Part shown: one piece after another, positions 415-42,085 of the stretch
Numbering within the stretch: the first letter of the stretch is position 1
How the letters are laid out: every line of letters starts with the position of its first letter
Assembly: GCF_000150275.1 (NCBI RefSeq)
Contig: NW_002060976.1
Coordinates: forward strand, 5,626-69,625
Source of the DNA: Trichoplax adhaerens
Lineage: Eukaryota; Animalia; Placozoa
DNA length: 64,000 nucleotides
Direction: 5' to 3'
Translations under genes and position numbers: made by a program
The notes under the pieces: generated by a model
The model's database searches: none
Told to the model about the DNA's origin: nothing
The model's input: only the letters and a program-made list of their open reading frames with translations

Positions 415-3400
415 TTAAACTCTTTCTAGAATGCTATATATATGATAAAAGTCTCTACAGATCAGTAAAGATTGATCTTTACTAGACCTAACTCGCATGT
501 TGCTATTGAATTGTGGTGACTGCAGTATTTGTAGTATGTTCAGCGTATATTTACAACGAATAAAAATTTTGTTATCGCTGGTATATATAAAAAAATTTGA
601 TCCCCATAAGTTATCTACGTAAAGAATATGTAAATTAAAAAATTGGATGTATGCTTTATGTCCCTTGGCGCATAAAACATTCTGAAGGGTGTAAATCTGT
701 CAAATAGAGATTGAAAATATTTCGCAAATTACAACTCTGCTAATGAATAATCCTTCTCACGTAATACGATTGTAAGTCAGTGATATATTGTACCGCAAAG
801 TCGTCTCCCTTATCCACGAAGAAAAAAATACCAACGTTGCTTAAACCACAGTCCTATTCAACGCGTTAAGTACAATGAAAGATTTATTCCTACGTAATCA
901 TTTGTCATATTTCAAGTTTATGCATAAATAATGATATTAAATAATATAATTTATATTTTACAGTATAATTGACTATGTAAAGCTAAATAAGGCATAAGTT
1001 GTTTACCATAAAAATATTCCATTGCTTTTGAAACTTTCTGGATGGTTTATTAACGGTATTTACTTCATTTATATCTGAAAAAATGATTCGGCTTCCCTTT
1101 AAGGACAATATGGCAACATAATTTCCATCGTCTTGATAATAGGAATCTTCACTTTCACTAGGAGTTACTTTTCCATTTTTGAAATAGTAGTGCTAAAATA
1201 GAGAAGTGAAATTTATCCAAAAATTGGAATAAACTAGGCGGTCAGATAATTTAGTAATATATTTATAATTGTAAGGGTAAAGTATAAATAACAACGTAGC
1301 TTCGTCATGTATTCGTATATAGCCATAAATTGACAATTTTTTTATGATGGGATAAATGCTGATTAAACGCACTACAGTACTTTGAATTTGATCATAATCA
1401 TGCAATGTTTCTGAACAAATTTGCTAAATTGAAGATGAAACTGAAATATGTAAAAAACAGAGTGAACTTCAGGATTTCAAACTAAAGTAATCAAATCACT
1501 AAAGGACTAAAGATAGTCTGTTGTCCTTAATTCCGTCTCTAGGGATATTTTGTCCTATCATTTATTCATTCATTCCGTTTTACTAGGCTAAGCTATACGA
1601 GCGCCNNNNNNNNNNNNNNNNNNNNNNNNNNNNNNNNNNNNNNNNNNNNNNNNNNGTCATGTGAAATTGGTAGAAGTCACAGGCATTCTATTGCAACGCT
1701 GCTGATAAGAAGTATAGTACAGTGAAATAAAGCGCTTATCAGGAACTTCTTAGCGAATTATGCATAAATGGTCAACGCTGTATGAAACGGACCTGAAAAT
1801 AATGTCATGGCAGTGTACATAACAAAAATCTCTAAGAAACTACATTTATATTTTTATCAGAATTATCACCTCCAGGTAATGCTTGCAGTCAGATTTTCGA
1901 CAATAAAAGATGATGTTATAATCGTCCAGGTACACACAATTTTCTATATTGCTACTAAGTTTCGTGTAAGAGGTAACTTGATCTCCAGTATCAAACTTAA
2001 TGATTGAGACGTGAAATATCTAAGAAGATGAAAGAAATTTCTTTTATTCCATTATAACATTAGAAAGTCTTAATGCTTAATTGAATCAAATTTCTAATCT
2101 CATAATCAGAACCGCTTTTGATAGCCATTTAATAAATACGACATTCTTTTCGTTATATAAACATTCGCTTCTGCTTTTCATAATGTCCGTTGTGAAAATA
2201 AGGTTTTGAGTCCACTTTCTTCTATTTCCGGGAGGCAATTCATACATCTACAGGTAGAATAATATCGGTGACAGTTATTAATAATTTTAGAAAATTTATG
2301 TTAATGTTCTATATTATTTGCTAATCAATATTACTCAACGACTGAAACAGCATCCTATCGCATATCTTTACAGTTAAGATAGTGTAAACTGAAGTATTTC
2401 TAGCTCTATCAATGATTCTAGCATATGAGGAAGATCTTTAGCTTGGTGCGCTAGATTCGATAACCCTTTTTGCCATAGATACATTTAAACGTTCATTCAA
2501 CATAGTTTTCATATACAATATTAATGAATTCTTTATACTAGTGACTAAATTTTAACGCCTATACCATTCATTAAACTTGACAAATTTTCAGCATTTGAAT
2601 CAATTTAAGAAAATGCAAATATTTATAAAACAAGGCTAGTTGCAAGCAATTCTGACAGAGCTAATGATAATACCGTAATGAAAGCATGCCAATGTACGGT
2701 AGAAGTAGGCAAACATAGCTCATTCCAACATTTATAGACTTCTTCAATCATTATACCGGGCATATCACAATGGAAATGATAGTCATACGATGCTTTTTCT
2801 TGATGAGATGCCTTTTTCGTACGAAGATCATAAATGTGTTCGATATTCAAGTCTGCACCAGTCATAATCTGAATAGTTATACGGAAATTCTGCAGTTAGA
2901 GCTGAAAAATTAAAATTTATATTGCAGTTTATAGACATCACCGATTTTTATTAATTCATACCGAAAGGGAAGAGTATCCTTCCTTATCAATTCGAAGCTT
3001 ACTTATAATCGGTATATTATTAACGAAAGCGGAATCAGATTTAACTATGTGATACTTTTCGTCCATGTCCTCGTACATAATGGTATTTTGAGGTGATTCT
3101 ACTTTTATAGTGTATAAATAAATGCCCTGTGTGGACCAGTTATAAGCAACTAGTGCAAAAGCTTCATGGATAAATTCCATAAAAACAATTTCTGAGCTGC
3201 ACACTATGACTTGATTTCCTATCATTACTCCATCTTGAAATTGATAAATCTGAATAGGAAATCGGTTGTTATGATATTAATATTAATAGCATTAACATTT
3301 GTAATTATATGCCTCTATCGCCTAGTATTTTTTTGTATTGAAATAGCTTGCTGTAATAGAGGAGATACTACGTATGTAAATACCTGAATATTACTCATAA

Positions 3401-6400
3401 TGCCAGATCTGACTAATGCGGCAATTAATTCGCCATCATTTGAAATCGCGACCCAAGCAACGAAGGCACCTTTACTAATCGCTTGAAATATTTCAGAAAA
3501 TTCTTCTACAACCCTTAGGCTTTCACTATCATTAAAATTCGTAGGTAATACGCCAAGTGTAGATCCATAATTCATGACGATCATACTCTCGTCAATTGCC
3601 TTAACATCATCTAAGTTGCAAATATTTTCGGGCTGGCAAAATTTTGCTATGGCATTACAGGTGTTTGCATCGATTAGCTCTGGAACTTCAATGAGGGTAT
3701 AATCATTAAGATTCTCAATCTCATGTGCCTAAAAAGAATTTTAATTTACATCTTTAGATTAAAAAAGGAACGGATAATAAGCAAGCAGAATAACATTCAC
3801 CTATCTTCTAATTTAGGAGTTACCCAATGCTGTAAAAACTTATAAATGCATACTTTGGCATAAACATAATTCTTGTTTTCAAAATCTATGGAAGTGAGTA
3901 CCTTGATTTCGCAAGTATCTATTTTTTCGATGTTCCATTCCCGTTCGCTGAAGGAGCTAGGATTATTTCTGTGCCACGATAATATCCGAGACCCTTTTGG
4001 AATAAACTCAAACCCCTGAATTTCGAGTGACTGTCCAATAGTTTGTTGCATGACGACTTCTTTATCGTCGATTATCCACGTCTAATGTAAAAGTTATCAT
4101 TAAAAGTTATGATTATAATACTTGTTATATGTATTTACTATTCTTTCTATGTTGCTATGGTTCATGTAATGCTGTAAATAAGATGTTGTATCAACTTTAA
4201 GTATACAAATGTTTATCGTTCAGGCGAGTAATATTAATATCTGGACTTAATTATAATTAAGTCCAGATTACAGATAAGATACATAAACTGTTAATATATT
4301 ACAGTAGTATAAATTGTAGGAGCGATGATACAAGTAAAATCAAAGCGAAGGTCAAGAAGATAGTATTACGGAGCTTAACGGCCGAGAAACCAAATTAGCT
4401 GTAGAAACTAATAGCAAAGTCACTTTATTTTGCTAAAATACAGTACTGTAACTGCTACTTCTCGTAAATAGCGTTAAGAACTCGAGTTCTTAAGGGTTAG
4501 GAATAGGCAGTAGTGTATTTCTAAACTTAGTATGATAATACCTCAAGATTTCTTTTATCTGAAGATAAGGTGACAATGAGACTGTTTTGATATGGTGAAA
4601 ACTTTAGAATGTAGGCCTCCAAACCAATGTTAATCGAATCGTCGTTAGCAATGAAGTTTAGTTTTCGATGATCTTCAACATTTATTACTTCCCAAACGCA
4701 ATTTAGACCTCTTTCGGAATGATTCTATTTAATAATTATTATAGCATTCAAGTTTCTAATTTACAATATGGCGCAAGCGTACCGCAAATACACAAGTCCT
4801 ATCCATAATCTGATGCTATTTGGAGTAACAAGCTGATGGTGATTTATTTATTAAGACTTTACAATAGCTACTGTATATAATGCATCACTAGCCGTATAGT
4901 ATTTATTGGCCTAATGCCCTTAAGACTTATACATACAGGTGATTAGACACAGCTACTTACATAATTTGGCACGTAGCAATATGCTAATTTGCTTCCACAT
5001 GGGGATATATTTACATTAATAACTGAAACTTTTTCCAGTTGATAGCTGAAACAGTGTTTCGCATTATCCGACTCTGTCACCTTAAGTAGAAATTTAAAAT
5101 TGGTATTGTTTATTCTCTACGACTGCAGTAGCTACGTTTAAGGGATTCTGAATTATACGCAGACCATTACTAACCAAAAGTGTAGGATATGTTGTATCAT
5201 TTCCCTTAGAGGATGCTATTCTGAAGCGTTCTGAGTAAGAATTTGAACATTTAGGAACAGGATCTTCTTTACAATTTCCGGTTCTCAGGGATTTTTGCCA
5301 CTTTTCCTGATGTTTGCTTTCCGTATAACTAGAAATTTATGCAAATATATACAATATCTGTTTTAGAGCTGCTGCCCATGTGTATATGTGACATATATTT
5401 CCGACGAAGCGAAAATTTTTAATACCTAACAATAGCGTAAAAGCTTCCCTGTGTGCGTCTTTTTTCAGCAATTTTAAAAGCTTCCTTATACAACCAAGAT
5501 ATTTTATTTGTTGTTACAAGTAAAAACTGAACAAAATCTACGGATTCGAACTGTAAGTAAGAGCTGTGTTCTTGCAGCAGTGTACAAGCATCTCCCAAAT
5601 AGTCATTATATGACATCTAGAAAATACAATTTTGTTTAACCTAACGATACTTTAGGATTGTTGTGATAAATAGTGATATTAGTGCATAGGATGAAGTTGC
5701 AGCTATTTAATTAATTCAAGTAAAATAGCCAAGCTTCCTTGATTACTTAAAAGATTTAAGGAGTTGCAAAAGACTGGACTGTAACAGTTTTTACCTGGGC
5801 TCGCAAAAATTTTTGGCATCTTTCCAAATCGAACAGCAAGTTTGATACCGACTGAGAAGCTTTGAGACTTACATCCATCCATTCAACATCCATGGCTATC
5901 TTGTTAATGATTGTTATGCTATCAGCAGAAATAGCATGTTCAACAAGATTTTTACAGAAGTAACCGTCATCCTCAAAGTCAGACCAACTTAGACGGTACC
6001 GGAAATACGTTCTGGAAATGAGGTCACGATTTAATTCTTTATAATGCTCTTCATAGGAGAGCTGTGACACTTGGCTCGGCAATCGTAAATAGTCAACAAT
6101 TAAATCATGCAAATTGCAGATTATCCTGTAATAAATATCATGGATAAAATTTAATTAAAAGCACAAGTCCAATTTAAACATTCTTTTAATGATCTTAAAT
6201 GAACGGGTCTCTTTCGATAATCTAATTCGCAAGGGAGTGTATAAAATCTCAAACGTTGCAGCAATGCTAGCAATCTTATTATTCAAATTTGTTCTAACAT
6301 TGTTTACAAACATGTGCTTGTATGTAACGCAGATTATGCTCACCTAAATTTATGTGCATTTATCCTGTCATGTCCAACTGTTAAGAGAGAACGATCTTGA

Positions 6401-9400
6401 AAATTATATAGGATTCTGGTTGCTGTATCTTTATCGAGTTCCCATAAGCTACTTATAATATCTATCGGTATCTTGCCTTTTCTAAAAACTCCTAACTTTC
6501 GAAACTGCTCTCTTTCTGTCTTAGAGAGTTGATCAATACTAGCTGCGAAAGTTTCCTGCAAATTTAACCGATAATGGGGAAGAACGTTTGCATCGTTTTG
6601 CTGAGCTCTCCTTAAGGCATTTCGCCATCCCTCCGCGGTTGCAATTCGTTGACCTCCTATTAAAGCTATTGCCAAAGGCAAACCCTTACAGTTTTCGATA
6701 AGCCTTGATATATCTTCATTCTCCATTATATCTTCAATGTTAAGGTGACTATGATACGAGTGTAAAATTTGCACTGCTTCACTATAGGTTAAGCTCTCCT
6801 GGAAATGAAATAATATTCATGTACTCTATCCGGCCGAATTATATTTTCCGCGAATATTGATTTTAGTCTACAACGTTAATTGTGTACTCATTGCGTTTAA
6901 ATTCGTTACATTATTAAAATGTTATCCTTTACCGGTGCATTGACCACGTAGTTATGAAAAGATTTGATGAAATCCGTCCCAAGTCTTGAAATAACTATTG
7001 CTTTGGTAGAAAATTTAAGATACTGCAAATACTTCTCGTTCCAAAGATCGTCGAAGACAAAGAGAATCTCAGATTTACTCCCAAATTTTTCTATCAACAA
7101 GTATTAACTACCTTAGAATAAAATTGCCCTGCAAGCCAATATCGATTCTATCACAATACCTGATTGTTGAATATATGCTATTTTAAAAAACTTTACTAAC
7201 GAGTATCAATTAAGTAAGTCTAAATATTATACTATGAGAAGTTGAAATTACCCTACAAATATAAAGTAGGGTTTCAGGTTGAAATTACAGTGCGAAATAT
7301 TAAAAAAATTGATGCGAACTTCCTCCAAATAGCATAACTTGAGAAATGAAAATACCCTATAAGTGTAGTGTAGGTTTCCGGTTGGCAAAACAAATAATGA
7401 TTAGAAAACTACATGTTATGCGACATCGCTCAAATTAATTCTTTAATTTATTATATCTGAAGGCTGCCAGCTTCAACAACATGGGATCATCTGAAAAGAA
7501 CGATACAAAGTTGTGCTGTTCTTTTCAAGTGATTCGTAAAGTTTTATCGTCTTCATTGTCTCTTGCTACTAAGCTCCAGATCCTAGCACATTTTTATACG
7601 AACCCTACGGGTATATTTATTTGTTACAATTACCGTTTATTGCTCCACCTAAAAACTTGCACAGATCACTTAAAGTTTTCCCAATTTCATCAGAAACGGC
7701 GATGTCCAGATCACGCATAAGTTCATGCATTGTCTTTAGTAAACCGTCTTCGTTAATGTTGCCTGCAATCAAGGTCGGAAGACTTAACAAATTTGCTGTA
7801 CACTTTAAAACACGTTCTCACGTCCTATTACGAAACTTAATATTTTAATTTTATTAGTTTAAAATATTCAAAACCTATTGTAATCCACCGAATAGGATGC
7901 CGAAAATTTTCAGGATGCATTTCAACGAATTTTTTCACTGCCTGACTCACTGCAAAAGTTTTACCACATCCACCAATTCCATGCACCAAAACATGGCCGC
8001 TGCACTTATGAACATTTTGTAACGCTTCCAGTAGATTTTTTTCAAATTCTTTCCTTACGACGGCATGTTCAGTTTTCGCCACATTAGGTACATGCTGCAG
8101 TATCTCTTGAATTCGATAGTAAAATTCGATTCGATTTTATTGATTTTATTAGCCAGATTTTGTTAATCAGAATTTCTTAGTTTAAATCTCGAATTTATAT
8201 GGGCAAACTAAAACAAGGAATAGTAGGTACTGTACTACAGCAATAAATAAATAAAATACAGCTGAGAGGACTGGAAATGGACGTTCAGTTTGCTAAAAAG
8301 GCGTAATATACAGTACTAACAGCAACAATAGCCGCATTGTGATATTGTCGTCGCTAGAGAGTAGAGACCCTTTAATAGCTGCGTTCTCATGAGCGATGAC
8401 AACGCAGCGACAGGAGTCTTGTGATCGCAGACAAATCCTTATTAATCCTTGTGACGTCACTCTCGGCGAAATATAAAATTTTGGCGACGGGAGACGAGTA
8501 ACGTCGATAAAATTCAATATAAAGTCTTCCATTTAAAATCATCTATTCAAATTTTAAATACCTCTCCTAAGCAACCATTAGTCTTTATCGTAGATGACTG
8601 ATTCGCGCTAACACTATTTCTAAATGTAGCAGCTGCTAGCTGTAAGGTTTTGCATTCTAAAGTTCGAGAAGATCCTCTTTACGTCGTTGTTTTCATGAGC
8701 TTAAAGGTCGACCGGTTTGGTCGTCAAGTGCAGTTCTTACAAATACAGCGAGCACACAAGCTATACCACATTCCATACTAGAACTGATTTGAATTTTTAT
8801 GTGCTGTACAGTGTACTGTACAGTATATAGTCACAGTAATATCGGAGATCAGGAATTGGTCTGCTGTTTCGAAACTTGACTATTTTGCTAAATAATGTCG
8901 AAAATAAAATATTGTAGTGTACTGTATTTTGTAGTAATGGCTGAGTTAGATTATGGATTAAACGTATGGATTCGTTTATTAGCGATACAAACAAAATTGC
9001 ACCTTTCTGTAGAGATTCTATATCGTAGATTCTTATGTGCGTCGTGTACGCCCTTTACAAAGTCAATTGTCACCCCTGAAAGTATGTACTGTAAATCTTC
9101 CTAAATTACGCAATGCATAGATTTACACAGTAGATAGAGTATTTGATAGAAGATGATGTATTAAATTGAAGAGCTGCTTGAAATTATAGTGTATCAAGTG
9201 ATTTACGCGTATCTTGCTTTATGGCTTTTCTCACTTGAATGAAAACATGACAAAACTTTTTAATTTACTATTTTAGATCGTATTTATCATCTTACCCACG
9301 AGATCGTATTCGGAATTAAACTTATTTTCTTGGTGACCAAAACTACGTAAGGTCCCCTTTTCAGAAATTTCTGCATCTGATTTTGAGCGAAAGACACTTG

Positions 9401-10676
9401 TAAATTCGTTAAAGTCAGATCGAAGTTTATCCATATTGCTTTCGACTTTCTTTAGGATTCCTATTGCATCATCAATCTTACTGAAACATCCTTTTTCCAA
9501 TTTATTTACGATTTCCTCTACGCCTTCTTTTGTAATCATTTGATTTAATGTCGCCATGACACCATCTATTTCTCGATGTAAATCTTCCTTTTTGGGTAAA
9601 TTTTCTACTTTGATCTTAAGATCTTTCAGAGTTTCAGCGGTAAAGTGTTCATCTTCATCGGTAAGAGTTTTCTTTAAAGCTGATGTAGCGTATTCTTTGA
9701 GAGACTCAAAATTATTTACTGCAGATAAATGGCTGCTGTAACTGAAATGTTCCCAGACCGCGGTATCAAATGGCACCACCTTGTAGCCTTTATCCCTTAA
9801 CTTATCATCTGAAGGAAGTTGACCGTTCTCAATGAGTGGCTTCAACTCATAGTCAGAAATAAGCGAGGGTCGGCGATAACCCCATTGTTTTACGTAATGC
9901 TTTTGATCGGGAAAATATACACCTGTACCTTTTTCACCTACTGCTCCATCGATAAGGCCTAGCTGTGTAAGCAAATCTCCGCAGGCGATACTTTTATCTC
10001 TACTTTTATCAAATAACCTTTCAGATGAATGCTTTGAAATGCCATCGCGTACTCCAGATACACATATTCGGGCTAAATCCTCTAACTGATTGTAACTCAT
10101 ACTGTTTTTATCCACTATACTAACTACGGAGTTGTCATTTAGTAAATTTGACTTTGCCATGTGATTTAGAACCCGTTTTGCTGTTACCTTTGCTAGCAAT
10201 CTTAGATTAATACTAGCTGTATCCTGGGTTGCTAACACTACCTGGTGCTCAAACATTCTACAAATATCGCAAGCCAGTAAAGCCACAAAAAGCGTAGTTG
10301 AGCTGTCGTCTAGAGGAAGAATGGAAATAATCTTTCTAGCCTTCTCTTTATTAAATTTTTTTCTTAATTTTCTGGCAGCAAATGTTGTAATTGTCAAGCC
10401 TAAATTTATTGGAACCGAAATTTCCGACCCAAGAAGAGAGGTCAATGGTTTAGCAAAATCTGAAATAAAATGTTGATATTGATCGAAATTTCCCCCAATT
10501 TCAGCTTCCATGTCTCCAGTGACTATACGATCGTACAGAATTAATTTTCGAATAAATTGCAAAATAAGAGAGGAAATAAATAAGTTTAATTGCCTAGTGA
10601 TTCGATCTTCAGTATTTTGAGTAGCGTCGCGACTTCGAGCGGTTATACGCTTTCTTAGATTCAAGCACTTCAACAT
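415..10676 (-). CDS. Apaf-1-like NB-ARC (STAND) protein, copy A: novel ~460-aa N-terminal module + NB-ARC + helical domain + degenerate WD40/beta-propeller; about 19 exons, roughly 1700 aa
   Basis: Exon 1 is 10676-9296 (donor G|GTAAGA). It splices in phase 1 to the exon starting at 8105 (EILQHVPNVAKTEH...), which holds Walker A GIGGCGKT. Walker B ILFVFDDLW and sensor AIVISR lie at ~6930-7090, GLPL motif CKGLPLAIALIGG at ~6650-6700, and Apaf-1-type LHDLIVDYL at ~6090-6115. A WD-like blade VNISPCGSKLAY lies at ~4960-5080. The last exon ...LICRDFYHIYSILERV* ends at TAA 417-415. The exons checked by eye are collinear with copy B; internal boundaries are approximate. Confidence 0.85.
1606..1655. 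other. Assembly gap (N run) in an intron of copy A
   Basis: 50 consecutive N. Confidence 0.99.
4239..4268. repeat. Perfect 30-bp palindrome in an intron of copy A
   Basis: ATCTGGACTTAATTA|TAATTAAGTCCAGAT is its own reverse complement. Confidence 0.95.
9296..10676 (-). CDS. Single large first exon of copy A encoding an uncharacterised N-terminal effector module
   Basis: 467-aa ORF in the track, with consensus donor GTAAGA at 9295 in phase 1. Homologous to 22278-23592 (KPLTSLLGSEISVPINLGL vs KPIVSLLGSEIALPVNIGL; CDICRMFEHQ vs CDVCRMFQNQ; WGYRRPS vs WGNRKSS). Confidence 0.85.
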
Positions 10677-13561: not shown

Positions 13562-16500
13562 CTATGCTATTGAATTACTGGTAACTCTTTCCAGAATACT
13601 ATAAGATGGATAAAAATCTCTGCAAATAAGTATACTTTGATCGTTATTACTTTTAATCTGCGAATTTGTATTTAGTTGTGGTGACTGAAAAACTTGCACA
13701 ATATCCATTGTATCTGTTCTGTGAACATAAATTTTGCCATTATTTACGTAAATAAAGTAATCGGAACCCCATAAATTATCGACAAAGCATAGATTTATGC
13801 GGAAATATCGAATAAAATTTAGGCTGCCTTTGACATATAGAACTTCCTCGTGGCTATAAATCTATAATGATTATAAATAGAGTATGAATTAGGATAAAAT
13901 GATAGTAGTAAGATACGATACTAGACGACATACCACAAAATTCTCCCCTTTTTTCGTAAAGAAAAGTATGCCATTGCCAATCTTGCTTGCTTCACAATTC
14001 TATATATTAATCAACAATAGTACATATTTTATAGCATCACAACATTACCGAAGGTAACAAAAACTATGGCATTAAAGTTAGCTCTTCGATGTTAAAACAT
14101 TGTTAGATTTGATTTCTTTAATGTGGAAAAGATACGCTTAATCTTTTAGTAGTTATGTTAGTATTGATATACAGCAATTAAAATGATTCACAGTCAATTT
14201 AATTCAATCCCCTATATAATATTTTCAGTTACCATAAACAGATTCCATTCCTTCTCGAATTTTATGGATGGTTTATTGGTGCCATTTATTTCAATTAAAT
14301 CGGAGAAAGAGACTCGTGGTCTCTTGGTGGTTAATATTGATATGTAGCTTGAATCTTTACGATAATTTGACCATTTACTGTGATTCATAATAATTTCTCC
14401 ATTGTAAAAGAAATATTGCTAAGCAAAAAATGGAGATATACAATCACGAGATTTATATCGTTTGTTTCATGCCACGACGTTACATAAAAAATCTATTTTT
14501 ATTACGACTGTTGAATATCAGATAATACTGCAATCAAGCTTTCAATTTACGCTCGATACTTCAGACGGAATATGTAAGGTACAATGGAAATATCGCGTAT
14601 ATTATACTTGCAAGGTGAATAATGAAATGTGTTTGGAACCATTAACTGTATTTTTCGACTTGGGCGTTAATAAAATACATTAAACCCGGTTTTATAGTCT
14701 AAAGATAGCTGTACTGTAAAATATAGGTCACTACATAAACATACTGTATACCTTAATATAATGTTTCTGGTCAGATTGTCGACAATAAAAGATCAAGTTA
14801 TTGTCATCGAGGTAAACACGAGTTTCAATATGATTGTCATCGCTCGTAAGAGAAGTTAATAAGTCTCCAGTTTCGAAATGAAATATGGAAATGTATAGAA
14901 TCTAGTAATAGGTAATTAATTAATATATATTCCGTACATGCCAATTGTTTGAGTTATGAAGCATAAAGGCCTAGCGATACTATACCTTTCTTGGTATCCA
15001 CTTCGCAAAAACCAGATTGTCTTCGGATTTTTGAAACAGAAATTCAGTACGGCACTTGGTAACATCCAAAGTAAAAACGAGGTTCTGTGTCCATTTTTTA
15101 ATATTGATGGATGGGAAACTACGCATCTGGCAATTTGTAAGCAATGATAATAAATAATAAATGAAGACATAAGTAGTTTGCAATAAAATGAAATTACTCC
15201 TTCATTGATTAGTATAGCTTTTATGACTTATTTAATTAAAGGTGAGAGCAAATTAAACTCATTTATTGTCAAAATTGATCGAATAAAATATTTTGGATCA
15301 GAACAACCTTATGCAATAAAACGGTGTTCTAGTTATCGCTACCAAAAGAATTTCCGTTAAATCACCGAAATTATATAAATAACTATAGAAAATTTCCATA
15401 AATAGCTTCATTTTGATTAGGATATCACAATTGAGCATATTCTGCGCGGAGTTGTTATGTCAATATACCGTTAAATATGTGTGCCAGTGGCTATTTGATA
15501 ATGATGTACAATTTTCTTCTGTACATTTGTAAATTTCCTCAATAAGAACTGCTGACATTTCGTTGTGGAAATACTGCTTATAAGAAGTTCCCAAATTTGA
15601 TATACTTTTTCTTCTAAGTTTACAAGAATATTTATCCATTCCCCGATTAATCTTCATCTAAAACGTTATTAAGGATGATTTTAATATCATTTGTGTGAAT
15701 CTATGCATATTTCCAGTGATTTTTTAAATGTTCAAATATATACCTCAAGGAGGGTATTTCCTTGCAGATCAGTTTTCACCTTACTTATAACTGGTACACC
15801 ATTAACAAATGCAAAATCAGCTTCGATAACTCTGTAATCCACCTTTCTACTGTCGTAAACTTTTTTTGATGGGCATAATTCTGCATTATTAAGGTGAAAA
15901 AAATACACTACTTGTGCCATTTCGTTGTATGCAGTTAATGTGCCACTGTTAAGAAATTCTATATAAGCTGTTCCTGTATTACACTTTATCCAATTTTTTC
16001 TGGTTATTGTTCTTCCTTGAAACTGAAATACCTAAAATAATTATAGAATTCTAATATTACTAGAGTTAAAATAACTCATTACAAAGAGTGCAGGAGTATC
16101 CATATCTTCAGGTGAAAGTTTACGATTTAGTTTAGATCACAACATCCTTACCAAGATATCATTCACCAATCCTGAATTAACCAGAGCAGCAGCAAGCCGT
16201 TCAGTATCCGAGATAGCTACGCTATTAATGAAAGAACCTCCAAATATCTTCTGGAAAACTTCAGAAAACCCTTCAACGAGGTTAAGTGATTTTTTTTTTC
16301 CAAAATTTAAATGCAAAATTCCCAATATAAATCCATAATTTAAAAATATTATGCTATCAGAAGCCGCCTTAACACTTTCTAAATTGCAAATAGTTCCAGT
16401 TATTGAACTATCAGGAATGGCTTTACAGCCATTTAAATCTATGAATTCTGGAACTTCAAGGATTGAGTAGTCTAGGAGATTTTCAACTTCTAGAATCTGT

Positions 16501-19500
16501 GCAAAATTTATTAAATAAATTCTTATGTTTAAGAATAACTACCATACTGCATCCGTTAGAATAAATATTTTAACTTCGCTTAGTTACTATCGGCTTTTTC
16601 AACTTTAAACTCATGAGTTAAAAATTTCAGAATATCATTAATACTGTGAATGGTAGCTTATTAAACCTTGATTTGGCAAGTACTTATGTGTTCGGAGATA
16701 AACTTTCGATCACCGAAGGATTCAGGATTTTTTCTATACCATAATAGTAACTTTGAGGAATTTGAAATGAATTCGACTCCCTGTATCTTGAAAGGTTGCT
16801 TTAAGGAAGATTCTTGCACGATCACTTTATCGTCATCTATTATCCATAACTAATCGTAAATTGTAATTTTTCAGTCGCCAAAATAAAATGAGTCAGCTCA
16901 AGGAGGTAAATTTAATATGTTACTTTAAATAAAAATTGGACATTTTTGATGGGTTATACTGCAGGGTCATTGGAAATCAAATTTATATTGAGTAATATTG
17001 ATTAGAGTTCGTTATTCAAATCGCATGTTAATGGGCTGATTAATCAATTTACCAGTAGTTTCGATTAAGATGAATTTAATAATTAATTGCTATACTGTAC
17101 TGTCGTAATGGTAATGCTAATATAAAATCTCTGCAATTATTTTATAATGCCAAACATTTGCCGGAAATGTTTACCTCAAGCTTTCTTTTATTAGAAGATA
17201 TTGTAACCAACAAATGGCTTTGACACGTAGAAAACTTCAGATTGTCAGCTTCTAAAATGCAGCTCATGGCATGATCATTTATGATAAAATTTAATTTAAT
17301 ATGGTCTTTAACATTCCACATTTCCCAGTTTCTGCTTCCTGTGTCTTCTGGTTGAGTCTAGCTGATTGATATTGATATTAGTAACGTTATATTTTTTGTT
17401 AGCTAAATATTTTATTCTTTAATATAATTGATGCCTTTAAAATGTAATTTGCTACATCAAAAATTTATAGTTTGAAATTTTTAGTATTTCAAAACGTACG
17501 TTAATAGACAGGAAACAATAAGCTAAATAATTCCCATTTTGTGAAATTCTAACGCTCACGACTCGAACATTCTCTAAGTGATGCGTGAAACGAGTCTCAG
17601 CTTTGCCAGACTCCTTTACCTTAAGACCATTAAATCATCAACGAAAGAGATTATCGGCTAATTTTTAAAAGATTGAGATTTTACCTAGAGTAATGTACTT
17701 ACTAAAACTGTGGGATTCATGGAGTCATTTTCTTTGCAAGAAGCAACCATCAGGGTATCAGAAGAGAGATTTAAACATTTTGGAACTGGATCATATGTGC
17801 AGGTCCCTGTACGTAGCGACTGTATCCATTCGCTATAATAGCTATTTTCTGTGTGACTGAGTGTGTACATAGAGGAAACAAGATATATATGATCCTTATC
17901 GAAATTTCAATAAGAAATTTATAAAAAGAGTACTTTTATATATCAACCTGATAATAGTATAGAAATAGTCCCTTTTATTACTTCTTTTCTTGGCGATGTT
18001 TAGTGCTTCACCGTATAGCCAGCTCGTTGAACTACTAGCTGATAGCAAGAACTGTATGAAATCGAGAGCTTCTAAATGAATATAAGAGCAATGCCGCTGG
18101 AGATGCGAACAAATATCTTTCAAACCGCTAATATCTGATTTCTAGATACCATGAAAAAGTTATGTAATCAGACATATGGATTTGGACTATGTCACAATGA
18201 GAATCTACTTCTTATGGAAGACTTTATTAATTCTGTGACTTATGTTATAGCTGTAGATTTTGGTATAGGACTATACTACGATGTAATAGTTGTTTACATT
18301 TTCTTTTAAGACATTGAAGGTCGTATCGGAAATACAAATCTATATTATTGCTGTAATTTTTTTATTTGGTTACAATATACTGTAATGCAAATAGTTACTT
18401 ACTTTTTCTTTTAAAACTCTTTGACACGACTGTAGCTGCAATATGAGATTAGATACCGATTGAGAAGCCCTGAGATTGATATCAATCCACTCTATATCTG
18501 TAGCGATACGTTGGATTGTTTCTGCATCGTCAGTGTAAATAGCGTGTTCCACAAGATTCTTACAAAAGTAGCCATCATCTTCAAAGTCTTGCCAGTTTAC
18601 ACGGTATTTAAAATAGGTTTTGGCGATAAGATCTCTATTTAAGTCTCTCCAAAAGTCTGCTTTGGAATCGATCATAGACGATTCAGAGGAAGTCCGCAAA
18701 TAGTCAATCAGTNNNNNNNNNNNNNNNNNNNNNNNNNNNNNNNNNNNNNNNNNNNNNNNNNNNNNNNNNNNNNNNNNNNNNNNNNNNNNNNNNNNNNNNN
18801 NNNNNNNNNNNNNNNNNNNNNNNNNNNNNNNNNNNNNNNNNNNNNNNNNNNNNNNNNNNNNNNNNNNNNNNNNNNNNNNNNNNNNNNNNNNNNNNNNNNN
18901 NNNNNNNNNNNNNNNNNNNNNNNNNNNNNNNNNNNNNNNNNNNNNNNNNNNNNNNNNNNNNNNNNNNNNNNNNNNNNNNNNNNNNNNNNNNNNNNNNNNN
19001 NNNNNNNNNNNNNNNNNNNNNNNNNNNNNNNNNNNNNNNNNNNNNNNNNNNNNNNNNNNNNNNNNNNNNNNNNNNNNNNNNNNNNNNNNNNNNNNNNNNN
19101 NNNNNNNNNNNNNNNNNNNNNNNNNNNNNNNNNNNNNNNNNNNNNNNNNNNNNNNNNNNNNNNNNNNNNNNNNNNNNNNNNNNNNNNNNNNNNNNNNNNN
19201 NNNNNNNNNNNNNNNNNNNNNNNNNNNNNNNNNNNNNNNNNNNTTACAGACCAGCCGCTGGTATTTGACGCATGCGCTTTAAATAAAATTTTATCAAAGG
19301 GATCGTTTTTATTTTACGGTAGGAAATAACGTAGTTTTTCATAACTTTTTTATAAGAATATTTTAAAAAGTTGTGAACTAGAAATAAGTATACCTATGCC
19401 TTTTGCGACTCATGTGACGTATTATTTGCAAAGTTACTATCAAATTGAAATTCATCTTACCTCTTCTTATTTGAATTCCTTTCATAGGAAAACATCAAAA

Positions 19501-22500
19501 GTGATCGATCATGGAAATTACGCAATACCCTAGCGGTATCTTCTCTGCTAAGCTCCCAAAAGCTACCTATAATTCTCAAAGGTATGTTGCCTTTGATAAA
19601 AACCGCAAGTTTTCTAAGTAATATTTTTTCCGTTGCTGAGAGTTCTTCAATGCTAGCCGCAAATGTTTCGTATAAGTTGAACCGATAGTATGGAAGACTG
19701 ACAGCATCACTCCTTTGGATTTTACTTAAAACATTTCGCCATCCTTCTGCTGTTTCAATCCGCTGACCACCTATTAAGGCGATTGCTAGCGGCAAACCCT
19801 TGCAATAATCTATAATTTTTGAAATGTATTCACTTTCAAGGAAATCCTTTAAATTAAGACTGCTTTGATAGGAGTGTAGAACATGGACAGCTTCATTAAA
19901 GGTGAAGTTCTCCTAAACATGAATTAGTAATTATGGTTTTTATAATTCTATTTGCATTCATTTAAGCTACAAATACGGAATGGATTATATAGGATACAAA
20001 TATTAGGTTATACCGATGCTTTGACAACATGGTTATGCATCGACTTCATGAAATCAGTTTGTAGTCGTGAGATAACAATTGCCTTGGCCGTAAATTTTAA
20101 ATACTTTATGTAATTTTCGGACCATATGTCATCAAATATAAAAAGGATCTCTGACGTACTTCCATATTTCTCTGAAAATCAGATATAAGGGTTATTTTAT
20201 AACACTTTGTCGATGATGAATACATCATACTGTAATACTGTTCTCATAGATGACTGATCAGTGTGCGTATCGTTGACTGGCAAGCAAAATTTATGAATGA
20301 AATTACTTAAATTTATTCTCTTTAGACCCTTTATAAATCTTATTTCAGGTCTAACCTCATACATTAACCATCACATGATATAGTATCTCTATTTGTCACA
20401 GCGAATATTGTAGAGCCGTAAAGACGTAGTTAATTAATTAAAAGAAACTAGATTCTGTATTACGGATAGCTGAATAGTCATTATAAGTAGTTACTGGCTA
20501 TGTTCACTCGTAATTACATTTTACTCAACAGATATAGAATGTTCGAGGTACCTACTGCCGATTTATGCTTTATCTATATAGTGAAGTAAATCTAAAATTT
20601 ACTACTACTTCGTTATTAAAAAGGCTAATGCCGTTTTCTTTATACATTTCGTTCAATAAAGTACGTAAAAAATATTAAAAATATGAAAGCATAAGTTTAA
20701 TTTATCTCGCTAGCACTTTTAAAGATTGTAATAGGCTGAGCAGAACATCCGAACGATGTCTAGACTTACCATATAGTGCTCCTTCTATTGCATTACAAAA
20801 TTCAGGCAAAGACTTTCGGAGCTCATTAGGTATATTAATACTTATTTCATATGTTAATTTGTTTAATATCTGCAAAAGTTTGTCTTCATTGATATTACCT
20901 GTGAAGTATGAAAATGCAGATTGATAAAATATCGCTTATTCGTAATGTGCTTAATTGTGAGGTGCTAAAATTATTGATTTTTCGGCTGTCACTATTCTAT
21001 TACAAATAAGTGAAAGAGCATATCATGAACTTAATAAAACATTTATTTTATGACTAATTAAAGATCTTAGACTAACTTATATATAGTTTAATTGCTAGTA
21101 TTTTTATTCTCTAATGCAACCTATGGTTATCCACCGAATTGCATGCCGAAAATTTTTCGGATTTTTTTCCACCAACAGCTTCACTGCTTGGCTTACCGCG
21201 AATGTCTTACCGCATCCACCTATTCCATACACTAAGACATGTCCACTATTATACTGAATTTTGGTTAAAGCTTCCAGTATTCGATCTTGAAAATCTTTTC
21301 TTACTATTAAGTGTTCTGTTGTTCCAATATGGGGAACATGTTGAAGGATCTCTTAGACATAAAGATAAAAGTGAATCGTTTAGCGATCACTGTACTTCTT
21401 TGTTATCATATATTTGTGAAACGATGATACGGAATAAGTGACAAAGATTTTCAGAATGGATATTCTTCTGCTAGTGCTACAACATTCAAACTAGGCGGAT
21501 AATGATTACAAATTTTACAACATTTCCAGCTTTTATTAACGCCAGTTATACTGCTACGTGTTGATCACTCGACATATTTTACAAATGTCTGCTTGGCATG
21601 CTCATAAAACTCCTGCGGTAATGCAGACGTAGTTCTGTTATTTAATTAATGCCGTAACTTTAAGTTATGGGTTCAATTATCATCATTTACTCACCACCCT
21701 TTGCAGTATCGGTTCTTATCTCTTCCATAAAACTATATTAAAACATTTTACGATACTTGCCTTCATAATAATATAATACAATATATAGTGCAAGGTTATG
21801 GGAACTTTACGTCTCAAACGTTAAGTCTGATTTTAATATATTCAATATTTGTTAAGAAACGTCATTTCTCTCAAATACAAGGAGTTGCTTGTTAAAGAGA
21901 TGTCATATTATTTCTTATTTAACTCGAAGCAAAGTTAATGTCAGAAGATCTATCAAAACCTCGAAATTATAACTAATGAGATCCTTTACTTCCGTTATGA
22001 TACGTTCCTAAAAACTTTTAAAAAGCATTAGAAATTATAGCTTTTATGGTAAAAGTCCTGCTGGTGTGGTTCTAATATTATAATTTACTAAATTTATGGC
22101 ATTTACGTTACGCACATTAGCTGTGGAGCTATAGGGATCGTTAGCCCGTGAGTTGAGCTATTTCTTACTATAAAACAAACTTAGCGAAATTGTTTTACCG
22201 GCTATAACTTTAACTTTTGTAATATCTACAGAGTCGTTTTTGGCTTACGCTAAATACACGCTGCAATTTTTACTCACCTAGTGTGTTGGGATCTTTTGTT
22301 GGCATCCTAGCTTTCCTACTGTTGATATCTTTAACTAGGGCAAGCAAATCTGCATTGAAGCGCAATAAGTTTTTGGTATCCTGATGTACCGCATCAATTT
22401 GAAGTTGCATATCCCGAGACTTTGACTCATGACGCTTAAGTTCTGCATAAATCGGGTTTATCAGTAGTTCAACTTCTGTTTTAGTAGGCAGCTGTGTTAG

Positions 22501-23592
22501 CTGGTCTAAAGCATCTTTCACTTGATTACAGAATTCTTGCCAGCGATCTATTTTCTCCGCTAAGTTTCGTATGTCTTTTACTGCATCCATGATTAGTCCC
22601 GTTTTACTATCACATAAACTCATTTTCAGTAAGTAAATGCTGTAGCTACTTAAAGATTCAATATCAACCACTTTACTCAGCTGACTTTCACATATATTGG
22701 ATTTTAAGTCAGCAGGGTGTAAAGTTTCTAGGCTATATTCTTCTGAATCTACTTTAGAATCTTTACTTGATGGTATAAAACTAAAGCATGGCTCGGCTAG
22801 TAGAGACGATTTACGATTTCCCCAAATTTTTTCGTATTGTTTCTCGAAGTCTTTTCGATGACACGTGATCCTCTGATTTTCTATAAGCACTGGCAGCAAC
22901 TTTAACAAATTACCACAGGTTATTTCCCGGTCCGTTCCATTGTAATTTATTTTTAGTACTTTAGACGACTTTTTTGATTCTCCTTCGAATAATCCAGTAA
23001 TGCCTATCCTTGCTACTTCCAATACTTCAGAGAAAGTGGTTTCATGTGCTTTCACAATGCATCTTGCATCATCTGCAAGCTTATTTTTAGATACATAATT
23101 GAGAACCCTGTTAACGATAGCGTTTGTCAATACTTCCTTATTAGAAGTTGCATCTGCTTCTGTAATCATGATGATTTGATTCTGAAACATTCTGCAAACG
23201 TCACAAACGATCAGTGATACTATCAAAAGAATTGAATGATGACAAGTATCCAAGGCATCAGTAATCTTGCGAGCTTTATCCTTTGCAAGTTTTCTTTTAA
23301 TTTGATACGATGTATAGGAAATCACAGATAGTCCTATATTTACCGGCAAGGCGATTTCAGATCCCAGTAAGGAAACTATAGGTTTCACCAAGTCATTAAT
23401 AAGTCTTTGAAAATTAGTTACGGGGATATCTTTATCTCCTTTTGCTATAGCTGAATATAGAGTGATTTTTGCTATGAACTTGTTAATACAGCTGATCATA
23501 AAGTTTTTTAGTAATCGTTCATGTTTACTACCAAGGTAGAAGGCTTTCGCAGAACTACAGCTTTGATTCATTTCATCTTCGCTTGCAGACAT
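13562..23592 (-). CDS. Apaf-1-like NB-ARC protein, copy B: novel ~438-aa N-terminal module + NB-ARC + helical domain + degenerate WD40/beta-propeller; about 19 exons
   Basis: Exon 1 is 23592-22278 (donor G|GTGAGT), in phase 1 with exon 21351-~21121 (EILQHVPHIGTTEH...VYGIGGCGKTFAVSQAV). Walker B ILFIFDDIW at ~20120-20150; CKGLPLAIALIGG at ~19770-19805; FEDDGYFCKNLVEHA at ~18540-18590; WD-like VRISQNGNYLAY at ~17510-17560. The last exon ...LICRDFYPSYSILERVTSNSIA* ends at TAG 13564-13562. The LHD motif falls in the assembly gap. Confidence 0.85.
18713..19243. other. Assembly gap (N run) within copy B
   Basis: 531 consecutive N. Confidence 0.99.
22278..23592 (-). CDS. Single large first exon of copy B encoding the same uncharacterised N-terminal module
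   Basis: 440-aa ORF ending ...NTL-G|GTGAGT (consensus donor, phase 1); paralogue of 9296-10676. Confidence 0.85.
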
Positions 23593-24988
23593 TTCGAAAA
23601 CTGAACCGCCTAATCGAAAAATTTGTTAATAAGTAAGCAACAAATTAAAGAATAAGGGCGTTTTATTTTCGCGCAGTAACGTAAGACGTAAAGATTATAA
23701 AAGAATTACATGATGGAAAATGATTTGTCTTCAGAGAACTTACGTTATCAGATGATGGCACAATAAAATCAGTTTCTACTAAAGTAAAGAAATGGGCTGA
23801 TATTCATATGGCTCCCTAAATAACATATTTGATAGATGACAGTTTCAAAAAATCGCGATGCTTAAGAATAACAACTTTGAGTTACTTCACGTGATGCCAC
23901 CTGATCGAGATCTTAATGCTTAAGAAAACAAAATGTAATAATTATTTTAAGCGACGAGAATGCACAGTATTTAATTTTATAAGTACAGTACACATTAATG
24001 TTTACAATCCTATCACTCTATTACTGCTATTGATTTATAATCCATGACGCCGTATTCATGTCAATGCATGAAGTACGAAATCATGACGGATATGAAATTC
24101 TAGAAGTTTATCAAATATCGTTTCAAGAAATTTTATTGAGATATACCTACCTGTCAATCTACTGTCCAATACTTTTTATTTGTAAAGCGAATGGTCCATT
24201 GTTGAATTAGGTGAGCAACGTACAATGTATTTACTATTCGTAAATATACCGTGCTTTACTGTATAGTGTAACCACAGTATATTCCATAAGTGCTAGGATA
24301 TTTCGTAATGTAGAACAGAAACGAAGTTTAAATGTTCGTTAATAAAAAAATTGGCTGAGATAAGAAATTTTACATTCTATCTAGTTAGTTTGATTACATT
24401 TTGTAACATGCGGTGACGCAAAATGACATTTTGTTTATTTATTATTTTATTTTAGTACCGCAATGGCATTTGTCTCAGTAATTAAAAATAATAGGAATAA
24501 TCTAATTATTATCTGCGTAAGCATGTCATGCTTTCTGTTAGTTACAAGTTGCTTCAAGCTTCAGAAAAGCTGTAATTGTCAATAAAATCTCTTAGCTTTA
24601 AAACAGAATAAAAATAGGTTACGTTAACGCGAATAAAACAGAGATAGTAAATCACTTTAAAACTCGTATTGTCAAAGAATATCGACTGATGTGAGATGTC
24701 TGATGTATAAATGGCAAGTACTTTTTGTCATTAGGTAATTTTAGTGAATAGAATATCGCTTTAGCCAGAACTTCATAACTACATAATAATATAGGAGCTG
24801 CATATTTCGGTCAAGGCAAGTACGAGGAGGCTATTTCTACGTATGAGAAGTCTCTTAAAATTACGTTGTCAGTCTTAGGTTATAATCATCCCAATGTTGC
24901 AAAATTATTTAAAAATTTAGGAGCTGTATATTTTAAACAAGGCATTCGTGAAGCGGCTACTTCTATGTATAAGAAGTCACTCAAATTA

Positions 24989-25014
24989 AGCAAAGCGACG
25001 GGAGTTTGCACTAG
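24989..25014 (+). mobile_element. Truncated Helitron-like 3' terminus
   Basis: AGCAAAGCGACGGGAGTTTGCACTAG followed by T; identical to the end at 33849-33874. Confidence 0.6.
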
Positions 25015-26056: not shown

Positions 26057-26323
26057 TTTTAGTCTGTCCAGTAGCATTATTCTTCACATTAGGATATGCA
26101 GGGCAGATATTATAATTGCCGAATTATTATCAAAGACTGTAATAAGGTTTCATCCGTTAATGCATTATTGAAAAGTAGTATTCTAGAAGAATAGTTGTGA
26201 ATATAGTAGTGCCCGGCTATTACCGGGATATATATATTGTCGAATGGTAATACTATCTGTTAATTATTAACAAATGGGCACGTTATCGTAAACCGTCAGC
26301 AAAGCGACGGGAGTTTGTACTAG
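26057..26323 (+). mobile_element. Non-autonomous Helitron-like insertion in the TPR pseudogene
   Basis: About 270 bp of non-TPR sequence ending in hairpin CCGTC-AGCAAAGC-GACGG, a ~9-nt spacer and CTAG|T. The TPR frame resumes at a position where the consensus has A|T. The 5' end is not defined. Confidence 0.65.
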
Positions 26324-41835: not shown

Positions 41836-42085
41836 CCTGTGACCTGTTCTACTCAACTACTGCTGGCCACTGAAGAGGAAAACACCCACTTCTACAGTAC
41901 CGTTTAAGATACCTTATCCTTCATCGTACTGGGTACAGTATTGGCTGATTTGTCTACAGTCTTTACACTGTGCAGGATTGTACTGTACACGGTAAGAAGA
42001 AAAGCAGCGATACTTTGCTGGCTGAAGTTTGTCGCGTGTGAGACTGTAGTGTGGACCTTTCTACCACTAGTACTGGCTGACAAAG

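What the first reader, a model, noticed from the sequence alone, without database searches (positions are those of the whole stretch)
415..23592. Apaf-1-like NB-ARC receptors with an unrecognised ~450-aa N-terminal effector module in place of the CARD
Seen: the orphan 467-aa (9273-10676) and 440-aa (22270-23592) ORFs each contain a consensus donor near their end (GTG G|GTAAGA at 9296/9295; CTA G|GTGAGT at 22278/22277). Both are phase 1. About 1 kb downstream each has a phase-1 acceptor (AAG|AG ATA at 8105; AAG|AG ATC at 21351) that recreates E-I-L-Q-H-V-P in frame with Walker A GIGGCGKT. The same junction in two diverged paralogues argues for a real fusion. Known: animal Apaf-1/CED-4/Dark carry a ~90-aa CARD here, while plant and fungal NLRs use membrane-disrupting (CC/RPW8, HeLo) or enzymatic N-terminal domains. 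Inference: this is an apoptosome-type scaffold with a caspase-independent output, a candidate new animal immune or cell-death system.
Basis: partly seen in the sequence, partly recalled or inferred. Interest (0 to 1): 0.9.

Follow-up and report, generated by a model that had tools for sequence, protein, structure and literature searches.

The report
Trichoplax Apaf-1 genes, new head domain
Two neighbouring cell-death-type (Apaf-1-like) genes of the simple animal Trichoplax really do carry a large, undescribed, placozoan-only helical "head" where the usual caspase-recruiting CARD sits, and the same head is also joined to Death domains elsewhere in the genome, so it is probably an output module of unknown activity.

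Summary
The window is Trichoplax adhaerens DNA with two tandem minus-strand Apaf-1-like genes (TRIADDRAFT_62114 region and TRIADDRAFT_62115). In gene A, transcript-type contigs from three studies join 9296 to 8105 exactly, and an 895-codon frame stays open across five RNA-defined joints. Gene B has the same phase-1 junction, but I have no read evidence for it. Both junctions are already in public gene models, so the fusion itself is not new.

CARD-bearing paralogues in the same genome use the same phase-1 exon boundary before the P-loop exon. The ~450-aa exon therefore sits in the CARD-exon slot. The module has no Pfam, PDB-sequence or fold match, and only 9 clusters among 1.84 billion representative proteins, all Trichoplax or unnamed metagenome contigs.

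A profile search found diverged two-exon versions of the head. They lie upstream of NB-ARC exons, Death-domain exons and possibly Roc-COR exons.

Synonymous divergence shows recent exchange of exon 1 between paralogues. I read the head as a shuffled output (effector) cassette. Its activity is unknown, and a membrane-acting role remains speculative.

This scan had already found the same head on other DNA of this genome (s1-767929, s1-739351).

Assembly gap 1 is intronic. Gap 2 removes about 8 codons at the start of gene B exon 6.

The parts
9296..10676 (-). Gene A exon 1: the whole ~460-aa 'head' module (ATG at 10676; phase-1 donor G|GTAAGA at 9296/9295)
   Evidence: ORF. RNA-type contigs cover it and join it to 8105. 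In-frame stop four codons upstream of the ATG. No Pfam hit.
8106..9295 (-). Gene A intron 1 (1190 nt, GT..AG, phase 1)
   Evidence: Skipped by contigs in X8, X9 and X10; present only in the DNA-like run X1.
7874..8105 (-). Gene A exon 2: EILQHVP...GIGGCGKT, the P-loop start of NB-ARC
   Evidence: Pfam NB-ARC E 1.3e-4 on this exon alone; RNA joints on both sides.
5795..7761 (-). Gene A exons 3-6 (7761-7634, 7090-6932, 6797-6343, 6124-5795): rest of NB-ARC (Walker B FVFDD, GLPLA), winged helix with the LHD motif, and the start of the APAF1_C helical domain
   Evidence: RNA joints; open frame; Pfam NB-ARC, APAF-1-like_WHD and APAF1_C.
418..5616 (-). Gene A downstream exons (predicted from open stretches and paralogue alignment): end of HD2 and a probable tandem beta-propeller; contains the intronic assembly gap 1606-1655
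   Evidence: Open stretches collinear with gene B and with P0002/P0003. A loose end of the RNA contig at 5795 reads into the exon that starts near 5616. WD40-like by language-model features on paralogue P0002.
22278..23592 (-). Gene B exon 1: 438-aa head module, 31% identical to gene A's (phase-1 donor G|GTGAGT at 22278/22277)
   Evidence: public model TRIADDRAFT_62115.
13565..21351 (-). Gene B exons 2 to last: P-loop exon 21351-~21119, NB-ARC exons, then HD2 and a propeller-like region. The assembly gap 18713-19243 removes the 5' end of exon 6.
   Evidence: No read evidence.
32456..33511 (-). Third, degenerate copy of the head module (frameshifts and stops), with no NB-ARC exons behind it

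Best explanation
SHOWN. The window holds two tandem Trichoplax adhaerens paralogues of the Apaf-1 family. Each has NB-ARC with intact Walker A/B, GLPLA and LHD motifs, a winged helix, the APAF1_C helical domain and a probable beta-propeller.
- The first coding exon of each gene encodes a 440-460-aa, mostly helical 'head'. It has a helical bundle (~residues 20-215) around a conserved A-C-D-x-x-R-x-x-E-x-Q helix, a small mixed region with an invariant G-x-R-x-x-S motif, and a long-helix stalk.
- A phase-1 intron joins this exon to the P-loop exon at the same boundary where CARD exons join in CARD-bearing paralogues.
- The head is a placozoan family with single-exon (type I, here) and two-exon (type II) forms.
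- It behaves as a shuffled cassette. Gene A's head is 68% identical (dS 0.5) to that of a paralogue whose NOD is only about 36% identical and saturated at synonymous sites. Gene B's head is 31% identical although its NOD exons are mostly 56-68% identical.
- Type II heads lie upstream of NB-ARC exons at two loci and upstream of Death-domain exons at two others, all with compatible phase-1 splice sites.

INFERRED. The head is the output domain of these STAND proteins and is switched on by clustering. Clustering would happen either directly, on the oligomerised NB-ARC ring, or after recruitment through a Death domain to DD-NB-ARC platforms, which exist in the same genome. This all-in-one versus two-component pattern is the one seen for executioner domains such as caspases (CARD) and fungal HeLo (HET-S/NWD2).

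Its biochemical activity is unknown. My best guess, at about 0.2-0.25, is a membrane-acting helical bundle. No residue pattern of an enzyme is conserved across both types.
For: - Species and public models.
- Splice junction in RNA-type contigs of three studies, and an open 895-codon frame.
- Apaf-1 homology: Pfam NB-ARC, WHD and APAF1_C. phmmer aligns P0002 residues 468-944 with human Apaf-1 118-588 at E about 1e-24.
- C-terminal region WD40-like.
- The CARD-bearing paralogues at C1394, C1400, C1404 and C1411 have a phase-1 acceptor at the same [DE][IL]L.[HND][VL]P position.
- Narrow distribution: 9 clusters in 1.84e9 representatives.
- Mosaic identities and dS.
- Type II heads: profile hits E 1e-7 to 2e-17. 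hhalign gives 98.7% (E 2e-16) and 96.1% (E 3e-9).
- Death-domain exons behind heads: Pfam E 1e-11 and 3e-6. NB-ARC exons behind heads at C1392 and C1332.
- Phase-1 donors and acceptors throughout.
- DD exons directly upstream of P-loop exons at C1410 and C1404.
- The head is more conserved than the rest of the protein (dN/dS about 0.38 for A versus C1363), as expected for a signalling end rather than a sensor end.
Against: - No function was tested.
- The AlphaFold models are of low confidence (mean pLDDT 54.5 and 65.2), so the absence of a fold match is weak evidence.
- Hydropathy of the three conserved hydrophobic helices is only borderline for membrane insertion (1.2-1.8) and is also normal for a bundle core.
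- Head-DD and head-Roc-COR transcripts were not verified here. The public model of the C1404 locus (TRIADDRAFT_59578) stops before the DD exon.
- Gene B's junction has no read support.
- The existence of head-DD proteins equally allows a head-to-head recruitment role.
Confidence: 0.65

Rival explanations
1. The head is a homotypic recruitment domain and works like a very large CARD. Heads on the activated NB-ARC ring would bind the heads of head-Death-domain adaptor proteins, which then pass the signal into the greatly expanded Death-domain network and to caspases.
For: The head occurs both on NB-ARC scaffolds and on putative Death-domain proteins. It sits exactly in the CARD slot. It has a long helical stalk that could pair.
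Against: - At about 450 aa it is five times the size of any death-fold adaptor.
- Heads of neighbouring genes A and B are only 31% identical.
- Type I heads have no intact free-standing or DD-linked partner. The only other type I copies are degenerate.
- In known systems, the domain that alternates between direct fusion to the NOD and fusion to a recruitment domain is the effector.
Confidence: 0.22
2. The head is a sensor, decoy, localisation or autoinhibitory domain rather than an output. The output would go through another route, for example another protein that binds the oligomerised NOD.
For: Plant NLRs carry integrated decoy domains. The function is untested, and the conserved hydrophobic helices could be an organelle anchor.
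Against: - No stand-alone host protein of this family exists for a decoy to mimic.
- The head is the slowest-evolving part between gene A and the C1363 paralogue, while the NOD/propeller part is the most diverged. That is the opposite of a fast-evolving sensor.
- The genes already have a propeller-type sensor region.
Confidence: 0.1
3. Artefact: the 1.4-kb ORFs are separate genes or pseudo-exons, and the join to NB-ARC is a gene-prediction or assembly error.
For: Each ORF has its own stop a few codons after the donor. The public model TRIADDRAFT_62114 is truncated. There are assembly gaps in the region.
Against: - Contigs from three studies carry the exact joint with no intron coverage, and they run on through four more joints.
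- The frame is open over 895 codons.
- The same phase-1 junction occurs at four loci in two species.
- Neither gap is near the junction.
Confidence: 0.03

Closest known systems
Apaf-1 / Dark / CED-4 apoptosome scaffolds, and the expanded placozoan Apaf-1-like family (Kamm et al. 2019, PMC6321704)
   Same: NB-ARC, winged helix and HD2 (APAF1_C) align with human Apaf-1 residues 118-588 at E about 1e-24. The C-terminal region is propeller-like. The exon boundary before the P-loop exon is the same as in CARD-bearing Trichoplax paralogues.
   Different: There is no CARD or any other death fold. A ~450-aa orphan helical module takes its place, so CARD-CARD recruitment of an initiator caspase cannot be assumed.
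Fungal HeLo/HeLo-like NLRs with their two-component relatives (NWD2/HET-S), and plant CC-NLR resistosomes
   Same: In logic only. A helical N-terminal domain is fused directly to a STAND NOD, and the same domain is also found on a separate protein that carries only a recruitment element (here a Death domain). The domain has conserved hydrophobic helices.
   Different: No sequence or fold similarity was detected (Pfam, PDB profile, Foldseek, VIA-align). The module is three to four times larger. Membrane activity is untested.
Other head-bearing loci of this genome already noted by this scan (s1-767929, s1-739351)
   Same: The same undescribed head family. Here it was shown by profile-profile comparison (98.7% and 96.1%) to include the two window genes.
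   Different: The window genes carry the single-exon type I form. The loci reported earlier carry the two-exon type II form with DD, NB-ARC or CARD/Roc-COR neighbours.

Membership tests
Apaf-1 / CED-4 / Dark family | NB-ARC nucleotide-binding domain with Walker A, Walker B and the GLPL motif | tested here: met
   Pfam NB-ARC on exons and on the full-length paralogues P0002/P0003 (E 3.5e-15 and 1.8e-18). GIGGCGKT, FVFDD and GLPLA can be read.
Apaf-1 / CED-4 / Dark family | Winged-helix domain with the LHD sensor motif, followed by helical domain 2 (APAF1_C) | tested here: met
   APAF1_C E 2.2e-5 on the gene A exon and 9e-9 / 1e-9 on P0002/P0003. The WHD hit is weak (E 0.0037). NLHDL is present. 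phmmer to Apaf-1 structures covers residues 118-588.
Apaf-1 / CED-4 / Dark family | N-terminal CARD that recruits an initiator caspase | tested here: not met
   No CARD or death-fold hit at E up to 10 in any of 9 heads. The PDB profile search gave nothing. CARD exons are found at the same slot in other paralogues.
Apaf-1 / CED-4 / Dark family | C-terminal WD40 beta-propellers | tested here: inconclusive
   Only faint beta-propeller Pfam hits. All ten best named ESM-Atlas neighbours of P0002 residues 950-1675 are WD40-clan clusters at about 0.90. No structure was predicted for this part.
Apaf-1 / CED-4 / Dark family | Cytochrome c or other ligand-triggered heptameric/octameric ring that activates a caspase | not testable with these tools
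   Needs biochemistry or cryo-EM.
Animal NLR (NACHT-LRR) | NACHT-type NOD and leucine-rich repeats | tested here: not met
   The NOD is NB-ARC, and there are no LRR hits.
Membrane-disrupting NLR heads (plant CC/RPW8, fungal HeLo, MLKL 4HB) | Recognisable four-helix-bundle fold or family signature | tested here: inconclusive
   No Pfam hit. No such chain appears among the best Foldseek or VIA-align matches (best Z 6.7, below the noise level quoted for helical models). The models are of low confidence.

The most novel reading that the evidence does not exclude
The head is a self-sufficient, caspase-independent executioner, for example a membrane-permeabilising helical bundle released by clustering. 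Placozoans would then run both an all-in-one (head-NB-ARC) and a two-component (DD-NB-ARC plus head-DD) death or immune system. That would be an animal counterpart of plant resistosomes and fungal NWD2/HET-S, built on an Apaf-1 scaffold.
Probability: 0.2. Interest if true: 0.85.

Novelty: new variant of a known kind. Interest (0 to 1): 0.55.

Why it matters
Apaf-1 is usually taken as a single-copy, CARD-to-caspase-9 device. Here a basal animal uses the same scaffold with an interchangeable first-exon cassette (CARD, Death domain or this orphan head), exchanged at one conserved phase-1 intron. That is a clear case of exon shuffling creating alternative outputs of an apoptosome-type machine.

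It also gives a defined, expressible 450-aa domain whose activity can be tested directly. If the head kills cells or permeabilises membranes by itself, it would link animal apoptosomes to the direct-effector logic of plant, fungal and bacterial STAND immunity. If it is only an adaptor, it is a new homotypic signalling domain of the placozoan death network.

Tried and rejected
- Pfam on both heads and on all 9 family members at E up to 10: only scattered coiled-coil noise.
- PDB sequence profile: nothing below E 0.4.
- ESM Atlas on the head: no usable hit.
- AlphaFold2 on the whole head and on residues 1-257: low confidence.
- Foldseek against PDB and BFVD, and VIA-align wide and second look: no match above noise. 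The only hits were coiled coils for helix 381-443 and assorted helical hairpins for 58-115. Bcl-2-like chains appeared only at noise level (E about 1-2) and are not evidence.
- Enzyme idea (the C-D-x-C-R-M-x-E-H-Q motif as a catalytic or zinc site): rejected. The cysteines, Asp and Arg are lost in type II heads of C1332/C1382, and the His is lost in gene B.
The phmmer search of 1.84e9 representatives gave no bacterial protein. A region search with P0002 gave only Trichoplax proteins. A scan of 185,579 prokaryotic genomes with the head profile gave no relative. A second scan with the second half of the module could not be run because it has no conserved stretch to search with.
- Word-index protein searches with profiles A2 and A6 added only TRIADDRAFT_59578.
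- ENA contigs carrying heads (L010, L011) are too short to show what follows the exon.
- The first dN/dS script had an index bug. It was corrected.
- The joined (spliced) protein of genes A and B was not sent to any search tool. Exons were searched one by one by reference, full-length analyses used the public paralogue models by id, and the join was made only inside a script to check the reading frame.
Full report
IDENTITY OF THE WINDOW. The window is G000:C1381:5626-69625 of a 105.6-Mb, 1414-contig, ~33% GC genome. Proteins encoded here are letter-for-letter Trichoplax adhaerens entries. The 555-aa TRIADDRAFT_62114 (P0001) is a truncated model of gene A. The 1395-aa TRIADDRAFT_62115 (P0005) is gene B.

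CHECK OF THE OBSERVATION. Both ORFs exist as described.
- Three runs from three studies (X8, X9, X10) contain contigs that join 9296 to 8105 exactly, skipping 1190 nt with GT..AG on the minus strand.
- X8 and X9 also carry the next four joints (about 7874/7761, 7634/7090, 6932/6797 and 6343/6124).
- These runs give no depth inside intron 1. Run X1 covers everything without joints and so behaves as genomic DNA.
- With these joints the frame is open for 895 codons, from Met1 of the head into helical domain 2.
- The loose end of the long contig at 5795 reads into the next exon (MSYNDY..., near 5616), so the transcript runs on.
- An in-frame stop lies four codons upstream of the ATG, so no upstream coding exon is expected.
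- A poly-T loose end at 10356 in X10 sits on a genomic A-run and is internal priming.
- Gene B has no read evidence. Its junction is supported by paralogy and by the public model.

ASSEMBLY GAPS. Gap 1606-1655 lies between the exons at 1849-2019 and 986-1192. In the gap-free paralogue B the corresponding exons are adjacent in the public model, so the gap is intronic. Gap 18713-19243 removes the acceptor and about 8 codons of gene B exon 6. Gene A exon 6 residue 9 aligns with the first residue after the gap, and identity is 55% over 103 residues. Frame and continuity across that gap cannot be judged. Neither gap is near the head/NB-ARC junction.

THE BODY OF THE GENES. Exon-by-exon Pfam gives NB-ARC, APAF-1-like WHD (weak) and APAF1_C.
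- The full-length public paralogues P0002 (TRIADDRAFT_62454, 1675 aa), and P0003 and P0011 (Trichoplax sp. H2, annotated Apaf-1), give NB-ARC at E 1e-15 to 1e-18 and APAF1_C at about 1e-9.
- P0002 residues 468-944 align with human and mouse Apaf-1 residues 118-588 at E about 1e-24, that is, right after the CARD.
- Walker A (GIGGCGKT), Walker B (FVFDD), GLPLA and the LHD motif are intact.
- The C-terminal ~700 residues give only faint beta-propeller Pfam hits. Their ten best named language-model neighbours are all WD40-clan clusters. I read this as a probable, diverged tandem propeller.

THE HEAD. Heads A and B are 31% identical (E 3e-56).
- No Pfam family is shared by the nine members even at E 10. 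The PDB profile search gives nothing, and the ESM Atlas gives nothing.
- phmmer against 1.84 billion representatives returns nine clusters only: Trichoplax adhaerens, Trichoplax sp. H2 and a few unnamed ENA metagenome contigs with eukaryote-like sparse coding.
- AlphaFold2 with this shallow alignment predicts a helical bundle (helices about 17-53, 60-82, 88-119, 125-150, 154-175 and 195-211), a small strand-containing region (240-304) and long helices (323-447). Confidence is low, with mean pLDDT 54.5 for the whole head and 65.2 for residues 1-257.
- No fold search rises above noise. This is weak evidence for a new fold.
- Three conserved helices are moderately hydrophobic (19-residue Kyte-Doolittle maxima 1.2-1.8). 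That fits either a bundle core or a latent membrane hairpin.

THE HEAD SITS IN THE CARD SLOT. The genome has at least 39 CARD matches and 33 P-loop-exon matches.
- At C1394, C1400, C1404 and C1411 a CARD exon lies 0.4-1.4 kb upstream of a P-loop exon.
- That P-loop exon begins at the homologous [DE][IL]L.[HND][VL]P position, behind a phase-1 acceptor.
- Clear phase-1 donors are visible at the CARD exon ends of C1394 and C1404.
- The same phase-1 donor ends the head exon at four type I loci: window genes A and B, C1363 and the H2 locus.
- The head exon is therefore an alternative first-exon cassette at a conserved phase-1 intron.

SHUFFLING.
- Gene A versus the C1363 paralogue: head 68% identical, dN 0.19 and dS 0.50. 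NOD about 31-36% identical, with synonymous sites saturated (pS 0.86).
- Gene A versus gene B: head 31% identical, dN 0.69 and pS 0.83. NOD exons 56-68% identical (one exon 35%), dN 0.30.
- The two halves of these genes therefore have different histories. Exon 1 was exchanged or converted between paralogues long after their NODs diverged.
- dN/dS of about 0.38 for the A/C1363 head indicates purifying selection.

A WIDER FAMILY. A single-sequence search of the genome found three intact type I heads, all on NB-ARC genes, plus degenerate copies. The degenerate copies are at window 32456-33511 and at C1413, which has no NB-ARC within 14 kb. A profile search found more. These are two-exon 'type II' heads, and profile-profile comparison confirms their homology to type I: first half 98.7%, E 2e-16, 184 columns; second half 96.1%, E 3e-9, 148 columns. 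What follows them on the same strand differs by locus.
- C1392:328k and C1332: P-loop and NB-ARC exons.
- C1404:1.72 Mb and C1392:320k: a Death-domain exon, with Pfam E 1e-11 and 3e-6.
- C1372/C1382: a CARD-like stretch and Roc-COR exons. It is not shown that these belong to one gene with the head.

In all cases the last head exon ends in a phase-1 AAG|GTGA donor a few codons before its own stop, and the DD or P-loop exon offers a phase-1 acceptor. The public model of the C1404 locus (TRIADDRAFT_59578, 551 aa) ends at the ORF stop without the DD. The head-DD join is therefore inferred here. An earlier follow-up of this scan (s1-767929) reached the same reading on the C1392 cluster, but that is not independent proof. 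DD exons directly upstream of P-loop exons (C1410:1821037/1819753 and C1404:2076189/2075119) show that DD-NB-ARC platforms exist in the same genome.

MECHANISM. The architecture and the cassette behaviour are shown. The role is inferred.
- A domain that is fused either directly to a STAND NOD or to a small recruitment domain whose partner sits on another NOD is, in the known cases (caspase with CARD; HeLo with the HET-S prion motif and NWD2), the effector. That is established knowledge of those systems, not a test made here.
- The head is also the better-conserved end of the protein between gene A and the C1363 paralogue.
- I therefore favour an output module activated by induced proximity, at about 0.65 including the architecture.
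- The main rival is a homotypic head-head recruitment domain (about 0.2), which the head-DD genes also allow.
- An enzyme is unlikely. The striking C-D-x-C-R-M-x-E-H-Q motif is not kept in type II heads, and only a Glu/Gln pair, a G-x-R-x-x-S motif and hydrophobic positions are general.
- A membrane-acting bundle is the most concrete guess but has only weak support.

COMPARISON WITH THE LITERATURE. Kamm et al. 2019 (PMC6321704) counted 39 NB-ARC genes in Trichoplax sp. H2. They described CARD, death-like and DD effector domains and noted models without any effector domain. Their Dataset S3D lists such entries. They did not describe this module. Two further full-text searches found no description of it. 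The fusion itself is in public gene models.

I could not test it with a type II query.

METHOD NOTES. The spliced proteins of genes A and B were never sent to a search tool. Exons were searched singly by reference, full-length work used the public paralogue models, and the join was made only in a script for the frame and dN/dS checks.

VERDICT. The claim of a caspase-independent death system is open. Interest is 0.55.

Noticed in passing
window 32456-33511 (-): A third copy of the head module is broken by stops and frameshifts, with no NB-ARC exons downstream. It closely resembles a second degenerate copy at G000:C1413:3218183-3219232.
   Followed up: partly
window 7874-8105 and 21119-21351 (-): The public models TRIADDRAFT_62114 and 62115 leave exon 2 too early (GIGGCG|NINED...). 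They drop the Lys-Thr of the P-loop and about 30 residues. The RNA contigs show that exon 2 of gene A runs on to about 7874 (…KTFAVSQ…WITIG).
   Followed up: yes
window 24779-26803 (+): Long TPR_12/TPR_10 repeat gene (NPHP3-type TPR; Pfam E 2e-69) on the opposite strand, next to gene B. It may be the repeat end of another STAND gene.
   Followed up: partly
window 42071-42520 (+) and 46772-47314 (-): Ordinary housekeeping genes: Mago nashi (E 3e-73) and an Arf-family GTPase (E 5e-55).
   Followed up: yes
L023 = G000:C1372:88000-97999 (+); L024 = G000:C1382:36000-45999 (-): Type II head exons are followed on the same strand by a CARD-like stretch and a 704-aa Roc-COR exon. It is not determined whether this is one gene (head-CARD-Roc-COR) or two.
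   Followed up: partly
G000:C1363:5388-6412 (+): A degenerate head copy lies about 7 kb upstream of the intact head exon of TRIADDRAFT_62454.
   Followed up: no
whole genome G000: At least 110 Death-domain matches and 39 CARD matches turned up in the six-frame search. There is a dense CARD/DD/head cluster at C1404:1.69-1.81 Mb.
   Followed up: no
window 10352-10360 (-): An A-run inside exon 1 explains a poly-T-tailed contig in run X10. It is internal oligo-dT priming, not a poly(A) site.
   Followed up: yes
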